IMG/VR virus record: IMGVR_UViG_3300027985_001318
Location: 62,001-126,000 of that record
Length of the DNA: 64,000 nt
Reading direction: 5' to 3' (one strand)
A program made the position numbers and the translations under genes. Of this stretch, positions 2,640-48,989 are shown one piece after another. The notes below the pieces were generated by a model that made no database searches, had not been told where the DNA came from, and was given only the letters and a program-made list of their open reading frames with translations. Numbering within the stretch: the stretch's first letter is position 1; each line of letters begins with the position of its first letter.

Positions 2640-3000
2640 ATTTCTTTTTTATTTTTTGATTTTATCCTTTCTTCGAAAAGTACGTAGTAAACTTACTCTA
2701 AGTTTTGATTAAAAATAGCTAGTTTTCTTCTTGAAAAACTAGCTTACGTAAAAAAATACGTAGGGGTTAATAATATGCACTATAAAAGCGGAACGAGCGA
2801 AGCGAGAGACATCTAAACCGAAGCTGAGGTGGAGGAGGATGGTCGTTGCGGAGCACGACCAGACGGGGGAAAACGAAGTAAATAGATGGGGGAAAGGGGG
2901 CAGGAGAGGATTAGATAGAATAGATTAGGAGAGGGGGTACGGGGGAGAACCTAAAGAAAAGAAAGAAAAGGAGAGGATGGGGGAAAACCCCTTTTTTTTA
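2640..3000. other. non-coding AT-rich/palindromic then purine- and G-tract-rich region (origin-like?)
   Basis: IR AGCTAGTTTT/AAAACTAGCT, 3x TACGTA, GCGAAGC at 2797, six G5 tracts 2865-2983. Confidence 0.45.
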
Positions 3001-3033
3001 TTTTTGCCTTCAGCAAAAAAAGGAAAATATCCA

Positions 3034-3519
3034 ATGGAACCGAACATCGATGGATTGGGCGAGTTCGTCCAACCTGAACAATACGATTTTAAAGATCTGT
3101 GGGATTTCAGTAATTACGACGGTCATTCCGGAATGGTGTTGGGTTCCGACGGATATTGTCTTTACTTGCTCGATTGTAACGAGCAAGATGGCTCTATCCC
3201 TAAAGAGATTTACAAACAGTTGGTGGGAAGGACTGTGGAGGGTTCTCTGCAAGTCAGACGCTACCATGAGGTAGAGATATTCGAGTTAGTAGGGAAAAGC
3301 TCTGGTAAAGCGTATCCTTTGCTAGAGATCTGGTATGTCCCCACACCCGGTACCCTGGGAGTAGAGTATCCTGGAAAGGGTAAGTACTGGATCGGAACCG
3401 AAGGCGTCAATACGCTGATCCTTACTTGTATCGGCGGATCCAATATCGGCGTTGATGTAGTCCTTTCCCAGCTGATTGGCTGGATAGAATCCATGGACTC
3501 AGAAAAAACTTTGGGTTGA
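3034..3519 (+). CDS. hypothetical protein
   Basis: ATG 3034 after AAGGA RBS (track start 2977 lies in a terminator-like hairpin). Confidence 0.65.
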   Translation: MEPNIDGLGEFVQPEQYDFKDLWDFSNYDGHSGMVLGSDGYCLYLLDCNEQDGSIPKEIYKQLVGRTVEGSLQVRRYHEVEIFELVGKSSGKAYPLLEIWYVPTPGTLGVEYPGKGKYWIGTEGVNTLILTCIGGSNIGVDVVLSQLIGWIESMDSEKTLG

Positions 3520-4565: not shown

Positions 4566-4654
4566 AACTGCCTCCTAGGTAAAAAAATACTTTGCTTACT
4601 AACATGTGAGCGTCATAGCATTTCTCTTCTAAAAACCAAAAAAAGGAAAGTACC

Positions 4655-4942
4655 ATGGAAAAAACCAAGGTGCTGATGTCCAGAGACAATCCTGAAGGTT
4701 ATAAACTCGAGGAGCTGCTGCAGTACATAGCGGCCGATATCGAGATCAAATCCAAGGATCTCTCCGACAAAATCGCCACAGCAGATCAGACCAGTGCACA
4801 GACCAAGGTAATGTCCAAGGTACTGGAGAACAACAATGCGATCGTAATGTTGCTCCAGAGCGCACTGAAAGCTCAAAACGATTCGTTGCGTGCCCTGGAT
4901 ACTTTGGGTCCTAACAAAGGCCCTGCTGCTCCCAGAGTCTAA
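4655..4942 (+). CDS. small helical/coiled-coil hypothetical protein
   Basis: AAGGA RBS, first gene of phuZ operon. Confidence 0.7.
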   Translation: MEKTKVLMSRDNPEGYKLEELLQYIAADIEIKSKDLSDKIATADQTSAQTKVMSKVLENNNAIVMLLQSALKAQNDSLRALDTLGPNKGPAAPRV

Positions 4943-4951
4943 GGAACCAAA

Positions 4952-6001
4952 ATGACTGCAAAGAAACCAACTATCGGCGCCGCTGGCGAGCTGCAACCGC
5001 CGACCGGCGATAACGCCGAAAAGAAAGTTCGGATTTATGCTTGTGGTGGCTGTGGTATTAATATAGCCAATAAGCTGGAATTCGAAACCGAACAATTCTC
5101 CGGTCGTGGTTTGCCGGATATCGTTCGGCTGGATACCAGCCGCAGTAATCTGCGCACTGGCGTTGAATACAAAAACCTTTTCCTGATCGATGGTAAGGAC
5201 GGTGCCGGGAAGATTCGTCGTGAAAACTACCCGGAAATCGCCGCAGCCATGGGTCAGATCGTCTTGGAACACGGGCCTCTTGATCTGAGCATCGTACTCT
5301 TCTCCGCCTCTGGTGGTACCGGGTCCGTGTTTGGACCGCTGCTCATAGGTGAGCTGCTCAAGAAGTCCGCAAGTGTGGTTGGCGTGATGATCGGTAGTAC
5401 CGAGTCTGCCATTACGGCCGAGAACACTCTCAACACCTTCAAATCGCTGGACGGGATCGTAAAGACCAGTCAATGCGGCGCCGCGTTGTTCTACGAGGAG
5501 AATCCTCGTGACAGCGGCCGTGGAAGCGTGGATGCGACTGTTCTATCGGTACTCAACGCCCTACTGGTAATGGGCTCCGGCAACCACTTTGGCCTGGACA
5601 CCAAAGATGTGGGGAATTTCCTCCGCTTTGATCTCGGGGCCCGTGTTCCACCCCAACTTGCGCTGCTGGATATTATCTCCTCGGAAGAGCAGATTGCCGG
5701 CCTGCGTGAGCGGAAGCTCGATCGCCCTCTGTCGGTATTGAGCATCCATGCGTCTGATGACTTCGTTCCGCTGCCGGTATCTTATTCTTACCTGGCCGAG
5801 GGCTGTTTCCTTGATGGTAAACAGAACAACGCAGCTTCAGTGCATTTCCTGATCGACAATGCCGAACTTCCGGCATTGGTTAAACGTCTGGATGGTATCG
5901 TTGGCGAGTATGCTGCCGTTGCTAATTCCAGGCAACAGCCCACCGCGCTTTTCGGTAGCGGTGGCGCAAGTAAGGCCGATGACCTAGGGATGGTGTTGTG
6001 A
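4952..6001 (+). CDS. phuZ: phage tubulin PhuZ (spindle)
   Basis: ACGGCGINI, DTSRSN, DGAGK, SASGGTGS tubulin/FtsZ motifs; acidic C-tail DDLGMVL. Confidence 0.95.
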   Translation: MTAKKPTIGAAGELQPPTGDNAEKKVRIYACGGCGINIANKLEFETEQFSGRGLPDIVRLDTSRSNLRTGVEYKNLFLIDGKDGAGKIRRENYPEIAAAMGQIVLEHGPLDLSIVLFSASGGTGSVFGPLLIGELLKKSASVVGVMIGSTESAITAENTLNTFKSLDGIVKTSQCGAALFYEENPRDSGRGSVDATVLSVLNALLVMGSGNHFGLDTKDVGNFLRFDLGARVPPQLALLDIISSEEQIAGLRERKLDRPLSVLSIHASDDFVPLPVSYSYLAEGCFLDGKQNNAASVHFLIDNAELPALVKRLDGIVGEYAAVANSRQQPTALFGSGGASKADDLGMVL

Positions 6002-6189
6002 TGGGTGGGGAATTCGTGTGCGATAAATGCGGGTGCGTGGATCTGGTCGGGTTAATGACGAACCCATCGGTCTTCCAATGCAGTGAATGCAGTACCGGCA
6101 AATGGCATGGTCAGTTCCCCAAACGTCAGTACAATCCTGAAGTCGACATTGTCGTGAACCGCCCTAATGGGCTAGGAATGGAGGGTTGA
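6001..6189 (+). CDS. small Zn-ribbon protein
   Basis: CDKC...CSEC pairs; TGATG overlap with phuZ stop. Confidence 0.7.
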   Translation: MGGEFVCDKCGCVDLVGLMTNPSVFQCSECSTGKWHGQFPKRQYNPEVDIVVNRPNGLGMEG

Positions 6190-6191
6190 TC

Positions 6192-6702
6192 TGAGCACTA
6201 GCTCTGCGTCAAAGAGCCAGTTCTACGGATTCCTCACAGTAAGCGCTTTGTTGTTGGCATGGCACCTGTTGACACACTCGGCTACATCCGAGTTCCTTCA
6301 GCTGCCCCTCGCGTATGGTGTACTGATCAGCACCAGCCAGGACTATCTGTCAATAACTAAGTCTAGGACCCTCATTGAGTACCAACACCCAACAGGTATC
6401 TTTGAGGGAAGTCGCGCCGCACTATCACCTGGCCACACCGCCGGACGTCGCGTCTGCCTTAGCGTAGGGTTCTGGATCCTAAGAGCTAAGTCCTAGATAT
6501 TGAATAAAGTCGGCGCTTATTGTATGGGTTCTAGGACCGCTCTAAAAACAATCTGGGCTTAGTTAATCGCAAGGTTAATGAAAGCAAAAAAATCAGTCGC
6601 TTAATTGCGACCTAAAGGAATAGCGATCAAAAGTTTAGTACACCGAGCACCTCACTGAGCGTGACGCTGAGACTTTTCACCGATCGAGTAAATGAGCAAC
6701 CC
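6192..6702 (+). ncRNA. candidate large structured non-coding RNA
   Basis: No credible ORF; more than 10 helices including long-range and crossing ones; G-U pairs fix the + strand; ends at a strong terminator. Confidence 0.55.
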
Positions 6703-6734
6703 AAAAAGTCCAGGGCAGTGCCCTGGACTTTTTT
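6703..6734 (+). terminator. intrinsic terminator
   Basis: AAAAAGTCCAGGGC-AGT-GCCCTGGACTTTTTT. Confidence 0.85.
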
Positions 6735-6795
6735 CAGCTTATTCTTTTAATGAGCTTCCTGAGTCTCTCAAACGCTCTCTATTAAAATGAAATAG

Positions 6796-6822
6796 AAAGG
6801 TAGGGGTTACCCCTACCTTTTT
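6796..6822 (+). terminator. intrinsic terminator
   Basis: AAAGGTAGGGG-TTA-CCCCTACCTTTTT. Confidence 0.7.
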
Positions 6823-6888
6823 AACGCAATGGCTTAGAAACGTTTTTAAGTACGCATTTAACCAATGTATGGAAGCAAGCACGTTTTG

Positions 6889-6908
6889 GACCTATATTAC
6901 CTTAATGA
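6889..6908 (+). promoter_or_regulatory. early (virion RNAP) promoter
   Basis: gaccTATATTACcttaatga; exact phiKZ early motif TATATTAC. Confidence 0.75.
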
Positions 6909-6930
6909 TAGGTAACGATAGGATATCTTC

Positions 6931-7275
6931 ATGAATCAATTCATAGTGGTTATAACTCTAGCCGAAGAGTTGGCTGAAATAATCGAACAGTTACCGTTCC
7001 AAATTAACGGGATTGAAAGCAGAAAGCTTAAAAGATTACTGGAGGATGTAATAGTAGGTTCGTTGAGGGTTCGTGGATTGCTTGAGGCAAGCCCAACGGA
7101 AACGGACTGTTTCAATACACCAGATTATTACCTTCTAGTAAACGCTTTGTCTCTTAATGAAAGACTAGGTAGATCGCTGTATCGACAAACTGCCCAGATT
7201 GCAACCAGATTTGGTTACGATGGCTGGAAAGTAAGACTGGAATTTTTCGATAAACTTTACATCCAGAAGGAATAA
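6931..7275 (+). CDS. small protein, array member 1
   Basis: AGGA RBS; N-terminal strand, helices, C-terminal beta hairpin. Confidence 0.75.
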   Translation: MNQFIVVITLAEELAEIIEQLPFQINGIESRKLKRLLEDVIVGSLRVRGLLEASPTETDCFNTPDYYLLVNALSLNERLGRSLYRQTAQIATRFGYDGWKVRLEFFDKLYIQKE

Positions 7276-7280
7276 GGATA

Positions 7281-7799
7281 ATGATTAACTTTGGCTATCT
7301 ACCTAATGCCCAATGTTTTGCTCTTAATCGCCTAATCTCCGAAACCACAGCCGGTCTTATTAACATGGCTACAGCTCTGGAGTTCAATCCTGGGCAACCT
7401 CTGGCTATTTGGTTTAATCGTCAGATCGTAACCGAAGTACTCAAGTCGCTAGCCGACGACTACGTCGATAACTTCAGCGTTTACGCTGCTGATTATTTCC
7501 AAGGTAAAGAAAAAGTCATTTCGGCACATCAGAAGCTAGATGAAAAGATTAGCGTGTTGTTTCCTGAAACAGCCCTTGTTTCCGAAACACAGAAAAATCT
7601 GATACGAGATCAACTTAGCTACGTTTTATCTGACGCCATCGATCAGATTTATGGTTTCGTATTATCTACTCTACTGGTACCTACTTGGCATGTCTGGGAA
7701 GTGCGTTTGATTGGCACTACGTTGATCCTGTCTTGCGGCATGGATTATCGGGTTTTGGAATATTATCGACTAACTGGACAGCCTGTGCCGCTCGAATAG
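7281..7799 (+). CDS. small protein, array member 2 (phiKZ gp42-like)
   Basis: TAAGGA RBS; recalled C-terminal motif W.VW.V..IG..LIL..G.DYR..EY. Confidence 0.7.
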   Translation: MINFGYLPNAQCFALNRLISETTAGLINMATALEFNPGQPLAIWFNRQIVTEVLKSLADDYVDNFSVYAADYFQGKEKVISAHQKLDEKISVLFPETALVSETQKNLIRDQLSYVLSDAIDQIYGFVLSTLLVPTWHVWEVRLIGTTLILSCGMDYRVLEYYRLTGQPVPLE

Positions 7800-48530: not shown

Positions 48531-48989
48531 ATGGTTATGAAAATTACCAATGTTCAAAGCGTTCTGAATCAACTCCAGATCATCCACAACAACCAGCCTG
48601 AAGCCAAGTCTTCGGTACAGCAGTACGTGGTAGCCAAAGCACTGGCCTTCGATGCCATCATTCCGTCCCAGGAAGTGTCCAGCCCGCGTGCCTATTACCT
48701 GGAAAACATCGCCAGGCCGCTTGAGGCGTTGCTGTCCCAGATCAACGAAGTGGTGGTGTTGAACTTTAACACCACTACTGAAACCGCTTACCGGATCTGG
48801 CTGGCGCGTTACAATCTGGTTTACGACTGCATGGCTAGCGACGATCTGGAACTCTACAAGTGTCTGCGAGCACAGTCTGTAATGGACGCTATCGTCATCG
48901 ACGGTTTTAATCGTACCGAGAAACAAGTAGGTTTCGATATCGCTGACAGCGTACGCGAGCTGGTGCGGACTTTCCAAGAAAAGGAGTAA
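48531..48989 (+). CDS. virion protein (gp85-like)
   Basis: Synteny. Confidence 0.55.
   Translation: MVMKITNVQSVLNQLQIIHNNQPEAKSSVQQYVVAKALAFDAIIPSQEVSSPRAYYLENIARPLEALLSQINEVVVLNFNTTTETAYRIWLARYNLVYDCMASDDLELYKCLRAQSVMDAIVIDGFNRTEKQVGFDIADSVRELVRTFQEKE

What the first reader, a model, noticed from the sequence alone, without database searches (positions are those of the whole stretch)
6192..6734. Candidate ~540-nt pseudoknotted non-coding RNA at the end of the phuZ operon
Seen: a long ORF-free stretch in an otherwise densely coding genome, full of helices. A long-range 12-bp stem ACAGTAAGCGCT (~6236) / GGCGCTTATTGT (~6512) closes one domain. Perfect 8-bp pairs ACCTGTTG (6264) / CAACAGGT (6390) and TCTAGGAC (6362) / GTCCTAGA (6490) cross each other, implying a pseudoknot. 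CCCTCA/TGAGGG encloses the 6390 strand. Other helices: ACTCGG/CCGAGT, TGGTG/CACCA, CTTAGC/GCTAAG around TAGGGT/ATCCTA, TTAATC-GCAA-GGTTAA (GNRA loop), GTCGC/GCGAC, AAAAGTTT/AGACTTTT. G-U pairs indicate the + strand, and it ends in a strong terminator. TCTAGGACC occurs twice (6362, 6530), allowing alternative folds. It lacks group I P/Q/R/S, tRNA and tmRNA ends. Inference: an unrecognised large phage RNA (ROOL/GOLLD-scale scaffold, ribozyme or protein sponge) co-expressed with the spindle tubulin and a Zn-ribbon protein.
Basis: partly seen in the sequence, partly recalled or inferred. Interest (0 to 1): 0.8.

Follow-up and report, generated by a model that had tools for sequence, protein, structure and literature searches.

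The report
New large structured phage RNA
The stretch after the tubulin (phuZ) operon of this uncultivated nucleus-forming jumbo phage encodes a roughly 550-nucleotide non-coding RNA; its elaborate fold is kept by compensatory mutations in three diverged phage lineages, it matches no known RNA family, and its function is unknown.

Summary
Window 6190-6739 (+) folds far better than shuffles on the + strand only (z -6.1 vs -2.1). Homologous elements lie at the same place (phuZ, Zn-ribbon ORF, element, terminator) in two other lineages from metagenomes. These share 46-55% nucleotide identity with the window (PhuZ 69-76% identical). Separate MFE folds give the same branched shape. Base pairs are kept by double substitutions well above shuffled and slid controls in every module. 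A 102-109-codon stop-free frame exists but evolves like non-coding DNA (dN/dS 0.6-1.0; PhuZ 0.03-0.15). No Rfam family, tRNA/tmRNA, protein family or bacterial genome matches. The RNA has two parts: a closed 5' domain (6213-6543) and a 3' domain (6544-6700) before an intrinsic terminator. The start of the 3' part (UAUG, small hairpin, CUCUUUACAAUCUGG, hairpin, A-rich run) recurs at motif level in more distant chimalliviruses. The Zn-ribbon gene goes with phuZ, not with the RNA. Expression could not be shown. Best reading: a new trans-acting structured RNA, possibly self-associating through an invariant palindromic loop; the mechanism is inferred.

The parts
4580..4606 (+). Probable promoter of the phuZ transcription unit: TAAAAAAATAC (4580-4590) and CATG (4603-4606). 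It resembles the phiKZ middle-promoter box AAanTTACc placed about 24 nt before the start.
   Evidence: Sequence. The box and the CATGTGAG..GTCATAGCATTTC stretch are conserved in L003 and L132, and partly in L127/L129/L130. The phiKZ motif comes from PMC4666361. Its function here is inferred.
4655..4942 (+). First ORF of the unit (95 aa, unknown function).
   Evidence: A 96-104-aa ORF sits at the same place in all relatives. Weak match to phrog_26726.
4952..6001 (+). phuZ, the phage tubulin (349 aa).
   Evidence: PF00091 and TubZ_C_2 relatives. tblastn hits to annotated 'tubulin PhuZ' genes of Serratia, Klebsiella and Erwinia jumbo phages at about 36% identity.
5998..6189 (+). Zn-ribbon ORF (63 aa, CxxC...CxxC). 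Its start overlaps the phuZ stop.
   Evidence: Zn_ribbon_IS1595, E 1.8e-4, below the family cut-off. Under purifying selection, dN/dS 0.14-0.3. Present after phuZ in about 32 of 66 IMG/VR chimallivirus loci.
6190..6739 (+). The structured non-coding RNA as a whole (about 550 nt).
   Evidence: z -6.1 on + only. nhmmer finds full-length homologues in L003 and the L132 family. RNAalifold gives 154 consensus pairs, 45 of them with compensatory changes; controls.
6193..6204 (+). Small 5' hairpin directly after the stop codon (GAGC/GCUC).
   Evidence: Each lineage has a hairpin here with a different sequence (L003 GUAA/UUAC; L132 family CUGU../..ACAG).
6213..6247 (+). 5' strand of the long closing helix P0/P1: P0 6213-6217, P1a 6220-6225, P1b 6227-6233, P1c 6236-6247.
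   Evidence: This strand varies (9 of 35 columns invariant) and keeps pairing mostly through G-U/A-U and C-G/U-G switches.
6512..6543 (+). 3' strand of P1/P0. It includes the nearly invariant GGCGyyUAUUGUAUGGGUyCUrGGrCC and GCUCU, and contains TATG at 6523-6526 and the self-complementary GGUUCUAGGACC at 6527-6538.
   Evidence: 23 of 34 columns are invariant, against 9 of 35 on the partner strand. The decamer GTATTGTATG also occurs in the distant relative L127. Palindrome found.
6250..6357 (+). Sub-domain I: P2 (6250-6259 / 6348-6357) closing the long hairpin P3 (6261-6306, tip ACUCGG/CCGAGU) and P4.
   Evidence: 93.2% of cells paired; 8 pairs with double changes vs 3.0 in shuffles, 0/500; slid controls 0-2. 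Example for P2: UGUUGG../..CCAACA in the L132 family against CUACCGCU/AGCGGUAG in L003.
6316..6335 (+). P4 hairpin. The stem covaries. The 8-nt loop ACUGAUCA (6322-6329) is kept in all lineages (first base U in some L132-family copies) and holds the palindrome UGAUCA (CUGAUCAG 6323-6330).
   Evidence: loop 7 of 8 columns invariant; stem UGGUGU/GCACCA against GUGCGU/GCGCAC.
6361..6498 (+). Sub-domain II: P5 (6361-6369 / 6490-6498) closing P6, P7 (6410-6455, variable in length) and P8 (6458-6490).
   Evidence: Model R3 was built from the L132 family only. It finds window 6360-6500 (E 2e-10) and L003 5386-5527 (E 5e-6) with exact module ends. 95.3% paired; 14 double-change pairs vs 5.0 in shuffles, 0/500; slid 1-4.
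6369..6408 (+). P6 hairpin with the conserved C/A-rich loop AACACCCAACA (6384-6394).
   Evidence: Seven of its 10 stem pairs show changes on both sides (helix 2). The loop is identical in the window and the L132 family; L003 has ACAACCCAUUU.
6544..6556 (+). Conserved unpaired linker. It reads AAAAACAAUCUGG here and CUCUUUACAAUyWGG in relatives; ACAATCTGG is at 6548-6556.
   Evidence: The same motif sits at the syntenic spot in L129, L130, L127 (ACAAACTGG) and L300 (AACAACUAGG).
6557..6585 (+). P10 hairpin (GCAA loop in the window), followed by the A-rich run 6586-6595.
   Evidence: helices 2 and 3. A hairpin of different sequence sits here in every lineage.
6596..6611 (+). P11 hairpin GUCGC/GCGAC.
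   Evidence: helix 4: 100% paired, 3 of 5 pairs with double changes (L003 has GCCAC/GUGGU).
6624..6686 (+). P12 (CGAUC 6624-6628 / GAUCG 6682-6686) enclosing P13 and a triloop hairpin (6650-6660).
   Evidence: helices 5-7: GAUC/GAUC, GAGC/GCUC and GAAC/GUUC. Helix 6 has 4 of 5 pairs with double changes.
6703..6739 (+). Intrinsic terminator: a 14-bp hairpin followed by a U run.
   Evidence: CCAGGG/CCCUGG against CCGGGG/CCCCGG in relatives. The simple scan did not list it, probably because the A/U pairs take the U run into the stem.
6796..6820 (.). Second G+C-rich hairpin with A/T runs on both sides (a two-way terminator). It is outside the RNA.
   Evidence: Conserved in the L132 family.
6891..6900 (+). 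CCTATATTAC box, probably the early-type promoter of the next operon (gene 6931..7275).
   Evidence: The same box precedes the next gene in L129, L130, L132 and L300. That it resembles the phiKZ early consensus rests on my own knowledge.

Best explanation
Window 6190-6739 (+) is a gene for a large structured non-coding RNA of a family not described before. It is the last element of the phuZ transcription unit: middle-type promoter near 4580-4606, a 95-aa ORF, phuZ, the Zn-ribbon ORF, the RNA, then an intrinsic terminator at 6703-6739. The RNA has two parts. The 5' part (6213-6543) is a closed domain. An interrupted helix of about 30 bp (P0/P1) holds two multi-helix sub-domains (P2-P4 and P5-P8). 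The 3' part (6544-6700) holds an invariant unpaired stretch (..ACAAUCUGG), an A-rich run and helices P10-P13. I think it works as RNA and in trans. The compact fold and the terminator hairpin would let it outlast the mRNA it is made with. Its invariant unpaired elements would be contact points for a partner; these are the P4 loop ACUGAUCA, the P6 loop AACACCCAACA, the linker and the A-rich run. The P4 loop is self-complementary (UGAUCA) in a covarying hairpin, so the most concrete guess is self-association through a symmetric kissing loop, as in the OLE, GOLLD and ROOL RNAs. Shown here: homology in three lineages, selection on base pairing, the strand, the non-coding nature, the terminator and the absence of any known family. 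Inferred: transcription as part of the operon, stability, action in trans and dimerisation.
For: Fold and strand: z -6.1 on + against -2.05 on -; 5' domain -5.2 against -1.0. Homologues: full-length nhmmer matches at the syntenic place in L003 and in the L132 family, which has 10 loci including L200 and L148 from an independent DNA-pattern scan. Nucleotide identity between lineages is 46-55%. Same architecture from separate folds: abstract shape [[][]] in L003, L133, L135 and L137, and the same minus one hairpin in the window; none of 60 shuffles gives it. Covariation on the whole alignment: 154 pairs, 45 with double changes, against 14-19 when partners are slid and 18 in shuffles (0/300). Covariation per module with the counting tool: 12 vs 6.6, 14 vs 5.0 and 8 vs 3.0 pairs with double changes, each 0/500 shuffles, slid controls 0-4. 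A model built from the L132 family alone recovers the window and L003 modules with exact ends (E 2e-10 and 5e-6). Not coding: substitutions are even over codon positions (17/22/26 and 57/59/54), dN/dS is 0.6-1.0 against 0.03-0.15 for PhuZ, there is no conserved start, and the open frame lies in frame 0, +1 or -1 relative to the upstream gene depending on lineage. No meaningful protein match. Not a known RNA. P4 loop: 7 of 8 columns invariant with a covarying stem. Palindromic loops make the symmetric kissing contacts of OLE and GOLLD (PMC12286853).
Against: No transcript was shown. The only RNA libraries that hold relatives (wastewater, 95-97% identical) gave short assembler contigs, may contain DNA, and have no strand information. 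There are only three deep lineages, so counts of compensatory changes rest on few independent events. The module alignments were fitted to the model structure. The MAFFT alignment misplaces parts of P3 and P7 for the window and L003. The P4 loop never varies, so the kissing-loop idea cannot be tested by covariation. A palindrome at a similar place in L300 lies in a stem, not a loop. Several conserved alternative pairings exist, so the single nested model is a simplification. No partner is identified.
Confidence: 0.55

Rival explanations
1. There are two isoforms, and a shorter RNA is the conserved functional unit. TATG at 6523-6526 would be a phiKZ-type late promoter with its G as +1. It would give an RNA of about 215 nt (6526 to the terminator) that begins with a small hairpin (GGUU-CUAG-GACC) and presents the ACAAUCUGG stretch. 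The 5' domain would be a clade-specific addition, present only in read-through transcripts from the phuZ promoter. Its P0/P1 helix would sequester the first 20 nt of the short RNA. This rival is compatible with the main explanation.
For: The 3' strand of P1/P0 is far more conserved than its pairing partner (23/34 against 9/35 invariant columns), which points to a second constraint on it. UAU..UAUG, a small hairpin, CUCUUUACAAUCUGG, a hairpin and an A-rich run recur in L127, L129, L130 and L300, where little or a different sequence lies upstream. The TATG-to-terminator distance is 210-260 nt in all of them. The hairpin right after TATG covaries between groups (GAGU/ACUC, GAGUC/GACUC, GGUC/GACC). 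The phiKZ nvRNAP late promoter is TATG with G as +1 (PMC4666361). Model R1 gives its best non-self hits at the syntenic spot of L130 and L129 (E 0.58 and 3.9). In two of three RNA libraries the 3' part has several-fold higher contig depth than the 5' part; this is weak.
Against: TATG is a 4-mer and is not sufficient for a promoter even in phiKZ. TATTGTATGG does not recur in the 64-kb window. The CM hits in distant relatives are not significant on their own, and R1 found nothing in 66 other PhuZ loci, L300 included. There is no transcription-start data.
Confidence: 0.3
2. It is a purely cis-acting 3' untranslated region. The structure would only protect the phuZ operon mRNA from 3' exonucleases, or insulate it from the next (early) operon, and the RNA would have no function of its own.
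For: It follows the last stop codon directly with no obvious promoter before 6523, and it ends in a strong terminator followed by a second one. 3'UTR-derived structured fragments are common in Pseudomonas phages (PMC10914365).
Against: A terminator hairpin suffices for that job. About 500 nt with about 15 helices, invariant loops and invariant single-stranded stretches is far more than protection needs. Most chimalliviruses have no such element after the same genes.
Confidence: 0.12
3. It is a small protein gene or a recoded extension of the Zn-ribbon protein: the 102-109-codon stop-free + strand frame is translated.
For: A stop-free frame of this length overlaps the 5' domain in all lineages. 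Each reaches its length in only 2-9% of dinucleotide shuffles. In the L132 family it is in frame with the Zn-ribbon ORF right after its TAA.
Against: There is no conserved start codon. The frame relative to the upstream gene differs (0, +1, -1). Substitutions are spread evenly over codon positions and dN/dS is 0.6-1.0, while the flanking genes show 0.03-0.3. No Pfam or PHROG match. No relative among 5.8 billion proteins. The single hit among 1.84 billion representatives is a 58-aa tandem-repeat artefact.
Confidence: 0.03
4. It is a DNA-level element, for example an operator or centromere-like site for the tubulin system, built from the repeated and inverted TCTAGGACC / GGTCCTAGA copies.
For: Four related copies exist (6220s, 6362, 6490, 6527-6538), including a 12-bp palindrome. 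TubZ-type plasmid tubulins work with centromeres (my own knowledge).
Against: The signal is strand-specific: many G-U pairs (19 in the window's own fold) would be A-C mismatches on the other strand, and z is -1 to -2 on the - strand. Covariation runs through about 15 helices that have no repeat character.
Confidence: 0.04

Closest known systems
ROOL and GOLLD RNAs (large ornate RNAs of phages and prophages; Rfam families)
   Same: Size class (500-800 nt). Phage-encoded. Many covarying helices with conserved loops. Function unknown. GOLLD also has a widely conserved 3' part and a less conserved 5' part (PMC12286853). A palindromic hairpin loop here recalls their symmetric kissing loops.
   Different: No match to either covariance model, even at E up to 10, in the window or in its homologues. 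Different secondary structure. The host phage is a nucleus-forming jumbo phage and not a Lactobacillales or rumen phage. There are no tRNA genes anywhere in the 64-kb window. Oligomerisation is untested.
OLE RNA symmetric kissing loop (L9.3)
   Same: A hairpin loop whose core is a palindrome containing GAUC. In OLE the palindrome switches between GGCC, GAUC and AGCU, and it makes a dimer contact.
   Different: Here the loop is invariant, so there is no palindrome-to-palindrome covariation. There is no homology with OLE, and no OapA/B/C-like partners are nearby.
3'UTR-derived non-coding RNAs of Pseudomonas phages (phiKZ 3'UTR_PHIKZ298; PAK_P3 ncRNA1/2)
   Same: They lie after the last ORF of an operon, include the terminator hairpin, and accumulate as stable fragments (PMC8545117, PMC10914365).
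   Different: Those are 90-210 nt with two or three hairpins and show no sequence similarity. The phiKZ 'p40' candidate is not syntenic: in phiKZ, gp40 starts 54 nt after phuZ.
phi29 pRNA (packaging RNA)
   Same: A phage RNA that works as an oligomer through loop-loop pairing (my own knowledge).
   Different: pRNA is about 170 nt, uses two different complementary loops, and belongs to a small podovirus with a protein-primed genome. Nothing links the present RNA to packaging.

Membership tests
ROOL (Rfam) | Match to the family covariance model at or above its gathering score | tested here: not met
   There is no match at gathering score in the window or in 8 homologous loci. There is none at E up to 10 on the element itself in three lineages.
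ROOL / GOLLD | Location near tRNA islands of phages or prophages | tested here: not met
   ARAGORN finds no tRNA or tmRNA gene in the 64-kb window.
ROOL / GOLLD / OLE | Homo-oligomeric RNA-only assembly | not testable with these tools
   Only a lead exists: the invariant palindromic P4 loop. Testing needs native gels, SEC-MALS or cryo-EM.
GOLLD (Rfam) | Match to the family covariance model | tested here: not met
Group I intron | Match to the Intron_gpI model (P3-P8 core) and insertion inside a gene whose exons join into one frame | tested here: not met
   There is no Rfam match. The element starts after a complete, conserved ORF with its own stop in every lineage, and ends at a terminator.
tRNA / tmRNA | Cloverleaf or tRNA-like domain with tag frame | tested here: not met
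RNase P RNA, 6S RNA, riboswitches and other Rfam classes | Match to any of 4227 covariance models | tested here: not met
   Only terminator-like chance matches appear below threshold.
Intrinsic (rho-independent) terminator | G+C-rich hairpin followed directly by a U run at the end of a transcription unit | tested here: met
   GUCCAGGGC-AGU-GCCCUGGAC followed by UUUUUU, at 6708-6734. It is conserved, with covariation, in all lineages.
Structured non-coding RNA (general) | Base pairs kept by compensatory substitutions, above controls, on one strand | tested here: met
   strand.
Protein-coding gene | Purifying selection on codons (excess third-position change, dN/dS well below 1), a conserved start, and homologues | tested here: not met
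phiKZ-type late transcription unit | TATG with transcription starting at its G | tested here: inconclusive
   The motif is present and conserved (6523-6526). It is a 4-mer, and no 5'-end data exist.

The most novel reading that the evidence does not exclude
The RNA is a self-assembling, RNA-only particle or scaffold made by a nucleus-forming phage. It would come in two isoforms: a late, short core RNA, and a long read-through form whose extra 5' domain masks the core's 5' end. This would be an RNA switch that times or localises the core's activity during infection. It would be the first ornate RNA tied to the chimallivirus life cycle.
Probability: 0.12. Interest if true: 0.85.

Novelty: new variant of a known kind. 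Interest (0 to 1): 0.62.

Why it matters
Large, ornate non-coding RNAs of phages (ROOL, GOLLD) are few, and they recently proved to be self-assembling RNA cages of unknown purpose. Nucleus-forming jumbo phages separate transcription (in the phage nucleus) from translation (in the cytoplasm), so their RNA biology is of special interest. Only small RNA candidates have been reported for phiKZ. A 550-nt RNA supported by covariation, with invariant loops, would be a new family in this group. It comes with a ready alignment for structure probing and cryo-EM. The possible long/short isoform arrangement gives a concrete hypothesis to test. Its narrow distribution and the lack of a cultured host limit the immediate impact.

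Tried and rejected
1. Known RNA families: Rfam searches at gathering and at E up to 10 on the window and on homologous loci gave nothing. ARAGORN gave nothing.
2. Annotated phages: distant blastn of 5900-7000 gave no match.
3. phiKZ 'p40' ncRNA as a syntenic precedent: rejected. p40 is locus tag PHIKZ_p40, and in phiKZ gp40 follows phuZ after 54 nt.
4. Coding region or read-through extension: rejected.
5. A scan of the alignment for complementary 6-mers kept in all lineages found only alternative pairings, namely the P2 5' strand with the P6 loop and the palindrome family.
6. RNase P resemblance (GGGAAGUC.. and ACAAUCUGGGCUUAG): recalled from memory. It was rejected because the candidate P4-like pairing is not kept in L003 or L135 and Rfam gives no RNase P hit.
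7. Zn-ribbon protein as a dedicated partner: weakened. A homologue search for it found only itself.
8. TATTGTATGG, TTACAATCTGG and CCTATATTAC as recurrent promoter boxes in the window: the first two are not enriched, and the exact copy at 48809 is inside a gene.
9. Bacterial origin: two scans of 185,579 species genomes gave 0 hits and 5 chance hits.
10. Pattern GNGTACTGATCAGCNC in viral contigs: too unspecific, 120 or more chance hits. Most of the 120 metagenome hits were chance as well; only L148 and L200 are real.
11. R1 search of 66 IMG/VR PhuZ loci: no hit.
12. L300 palindrome CUACGUAG as a covarying counterpart of the P4 loop: rejected, because it lies in a stem.
13. RNA-seq: only fragmentary contigs, with no strand or end information.
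14. I did not pass a 600-character structure string to the count of structure pairs. The whole-alignment statistics were computed in a script instead, and the tool was used on model-derived alignments.
Full report
Source and context. The window is part of IMGVR_UViG_3300027985_001318, a 223,650-bp uncultivated viral contig. ORF 4952..6001 is a PhuZ tubulin (PF00091). Its best matches are annotated 'tubulin PhuZ' genes of Serratia, Klebsiella and Erwinia jumbo phages at about 36% identity. The phage is therefore a distant, new member of the nucleus-forming (phiKZ-like) group. A 63-aa Zn-ribbon ORF (5998..6189) overlaps the phuZ stop. The next gene starts at 6931. No tRNA or tmRNA gene lies in the 64 kb.

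Check of the observation. The + strand of 6192-6734 folds to -189.9 kcal/mol (z = -6.1, 0 of 100 dinucleotide shuffles as good). The - strand gives z = -2.05. The 5' domain alone gives z -5.2 on + and -1.0 on -. The 3' domain gives -2.5 and -0.1. Coding controls in the same window lie between -0.5 and -3.4. The stretch is not strictly ORF-free: it contains an 82-aa TTG ORF inside a 102-codon open frame.

Relatives. PhuZ has only three close protein clusters (69-78% identity); the next relatives are at or below 46%. Their contigs show the same gene order: DUF7484 gene on the - strand, a 96-aa ORF, phuZ, the Zn-ribbon ORF, about 550 nt without a called gene, then the homologue of the window's 114-aa gene. 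A DNA profile of the element finds full-length copies in L003 (with partial near-identical L004 and L005) and in the L132 family. That family comprises L132-L139 plus L200 and L148, the last two from an independent pattern scan of JGI metagenomes. The profile finds nothing else among 261 loci, and no second copy in the window. The three lineages share only 46-55% nucleotide identity over the element. The L132 family is 79-100% identical within itself and is mosaic.

Structure and selection. Separate MFE folds of each lineage give the same architecture. The abstract shape of the 5' domain is [[][]] in L003, L133, L135 and L137. The window has the same shape minus one hairpin, which it has lost. 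None of 60 shuffles gives this shape. RNAalifold on nine full-length copies predicts 154 pairs, 45 of them with changes on both sides. In a script, sliding the 3' partners by 1-3 columns leaves 14-19 such pairs and 35-41% canonical cells, against 93% observed. Column shuffles give 18 such pairs on average, and 0 of 300 reach 45. MAFFT misplaces parts of P3 and P7 in the two outlying lineages, so I also used covariance models. R3 was built from the L132 family only. It recovers window 6360-6500 (E 2e-10) and L003 5386-5527 (E 5e-6) with exact module ends. R2 recovers window 6247-6361 only weakly (E 0.5) and misses L003. On the model-derived alignments the counting tool gives the following. For the 3' domain: 96.7% paired and 12 pairs with double changes, against 6.6 in shuffles. 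For sub-domain II: 95.3% and 14 against 5.0. For sub-domain I: 93.2% and 8 against 3.0. In each case 0 of 500 shuffles reach the observed value and slid controls give 0-4. These alignments lean towards the model structure, and only three deep lineages exist, so the number of independent events is modest. The agreement of several independent lines is nonetheless convincing.

Anatomy (window coordinates).
- A small hairpin lies at 6193-6204.
- P0 is 6213-6217 with 6539-6543. P1 is 6220-6247 with 6512-6537.
- Sub-domain I: P2 is 6250-6259 with 6348-6357. P3 is the long hairpin 6261-6306. P4 is the hairpin 6316-6335.
- Sub-domain II: P5 is 6361-6369 with 6490-6498. P6 is 6369-6408, P7 is 6410-6455 and P8 is 6458-6490.
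- The unpaired linker 6544-6556 ends in ACAAUCUGG.
- P10 is 6557-6585, followed by an A-rich run. P11 is 6596-6611.
- P12 is 6624-6628 with 6682-6686 and encloses P13.
- The terminator is 6703-6739.

Elements conserved in sequence rather than in pairing are the following:
- The P4 loop ACUGAUCA, with 7 of 8 columns invariant over a covarying stem.
- The P6 loop AACACCCAACA.
- The 3' strand of P1/P0, with 23 of 34 columns invariant against 9 of 35 on its partner strand.
- The linker and the A-rich run.

The P4 loop contains the palindrome UGAUCA. The P1 3' strand contains a 12-nt self-complementary stretch that repeats the two strands of P5.

ACCTGTTG (6264) / CAACAGGT (6390) has no counterpart in the L132 family or L003, so the pseudoknot is not supported. 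A scan for complementary 6-mers kept in all lineages finds that the P6 loop complements the P2 5' strand (UGUUGG/CCAACA) instead. That strand is already used in P2, so this is an alternative pairing. AAAAGTTT/AGACTTTT is broken in L133 and L135.

Not a gene for a protein. A 102-109-codon stop-free + strand frame overlaps the 5' domain in every lineage. Each reaches its length in only 2-9% of shuffles. This had to be taken seriously, but five findings count against coding:
- There is no conserved start codon.
- The frame is 0, +1 or -1 relative to the Zn-ribbon ORF, depending on the lineage.
- Substitutions are spread evenly over codon positions (17/22/26 within the L132 family; 57/59/54 for window against L132).
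- dN/dS is 0.6-1.0, against 0.03-0.15 for PhuZ and 0.14-0.3 for the Zn-ribbon ORF in the same pairs.
- Pfam and PHROGs give nothing, and the word-indexed search of 5.8 billion proteins gives nothing. The exhaustive search of 1.84 billion representatives gives one hit, to a 58-aa tandem-repeat artefact.

Not a known RNA. Rfam 15 gives no match at gathering score in the window or in eight related loci. At E up to 10 on the element itself in three lineages, only terminator-like chance matches appear. Distant blastn against 50,697 phage records finds nothing. Two pattern scans of one genome per bacterial and archaeal species find nothing real. The phiKZ ncRNA candidate 'p40' is not syntenic. The 2023 catalogue of viral structured-RNA candidates holds motifs of 29-151 nt that needed three or more IMG/VR regions. 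This element has only one IMG/VR copy.

Transcription context. Upstream of the 95-aa ORF lie TAAAAAAATAC and, 13 nt on, CATG. Both are conserved in relatives and resemble the phiKZ middle-promoter box. After the RNA come its terminator, a second two-way hairpin (6796-6820) and a CCTATATTAC box (6891) before the next operon. The RNA is thus most simply the 3' end of a phuZ transcript of about 2.1 kb. That is an inference.

A wider, older core. In phages whose PhuZ is only 37-44% identical (L127, L129, L130, L300), the same operon also ends in an ORF-free stretch with a strong terminator. Each has the same order of elements: UAU..UAUG, then a small hairpin of different sequence, then CUCUUUACAAUCUGG or a close variant, then a hairpin, then AAAAAG(CG)UA. 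The distance from TATG to the terminator is 210-260 nt in all of them. L127 shares the decamer GTATTGTATG, which there closes a much smaller P1-like stem. Model R1 of the 3' domain gives its best non-self hits at exactly these places in L130 and L129, but the E-values are only 0.58 and 3.9. It finds nothing in 66 other PhuZ loci. This is motif-level evidence. It suggests that the 3' part is the ancestral unit and that the 330-nt 5' domain is an addition of the window's clade. The phiKZ late promoter is TATG with its G as +1, and the TATG-bearing strand of P1 is unusually conserved. A shorter late RNA starting at 6526 is therefore a serious possibility.

Expression. Four wastewater RNA-seq libraries hold relatives that are 95-97% identical. 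Their assembler contigs cover parts of phuZ, 5971-6337 and 6546-6698, and nothing at 6740-7440. The contigs have no strand information, the libraries may contain DNA, and depth is unreliable. Expression is not shown.

The Zn-ribbon protein. A profile of it finds an ORF right after phuZ in about 32 of 66 IMG/VR chimallivirus loci. In most of these it is followed at about 12 nt by another ORF. It is a companion of phuZ and not specifically of the RNA.

Conclusion. The finding is real. It is a new family of large structured RNA in a small clade of uncultivated nucleus-forming phages, probably with a more widespread core. What it does is unknown. I favour a trans-acting stable RNA whose invariant unpaired elements bind a partner, with self-association through the palindromic P4 loop as the most testable idea. 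A two-isoform arrangement ranks second and is compatible with it.

Noticed in passing
L003:5809-7698: In the L003 lineage a 629-aa methyl-accepting chemotaxis protein (Cache_3-Cache_2, sCache_3_3 and MCPsignal domains) is inserted between the RNA and the homologue of the window's 114-aa gene. This is an unusual cargo for a jumbo phage, and a hint that the host is a motile bacterium.
   Followed up: no
window 5998-6189; L264-L329: A short Zn-ribbon ORF (CxxC..CxxC..WHG..NRP.G) follows phuZ directly in about half of 66 IMG/VR chimallivirus loci. More distant versions carry two insertions. It looks like a conserved but unstudied companion of the phage tubulin.
   Followed up: partly
window 6188-6496 and the same place in L003 and the L132 family: A stop-free frame of 102-109 codons persists in all lineages although it evolves like non-coding sequence and sits in different frames relative to the upstream gene. 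Why stops are avoided is unexplained. It may be a by-product of the conserved islands and the G+C-rich helices.
   Followed up: yes
L132, L133, L135, L200 (RNA region): The RNA of the L132 family is mosaic. L200 is identical to L132 in the 5' part and to L133/L135 in the 3' domain, so recombination occurs inside the element between co-circulating phages.
   Followed up: partly
window 2700-2976: A strongly purine-rich + strand tract (GC skew 0.48, AT skew 0.33; runs of C and U on the - strand) lies in an ORF-poor gap before ORF 2977..3519. The - strand fold has z -4.6.
   Followed up: no
L300:4760-5000: Another chimallivirus (PhuZ 37% identical) has about 240 nt of G+C-rich, highly foldable, ORF-free sequence upstream of its TATGGTATGG and core motifs. 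This is a differently built 5' domain at the same place.
   Followed up: partly
L006:1431-2633: In one metagenome contig the phuZ ORF is cut to 269 aa and is followed by an HTH_Tnp_1 transposase-like ORF on the other strand. This may be an insertion sequence in a phage tubulin gene.
   Followed up: no
window 4580-4606 and 6891-6900: Boxes that resemble the phiKZ middle (AAanTTAC .. start) and early (TATATTAC) promoter motifs are kept in this very distant relative and its kin. The promoter grammar of the family therefore seems older than the sequence similarity of its genes suggests.
   Followed up: partly
window 5000-6700 in runs X1-X4: Wastewater RNA-seq libraries of 2025 contain relatives 95-97% identical to this phage, so the lineage is present in sewage and might be isolated from there.
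   Followed up: partly
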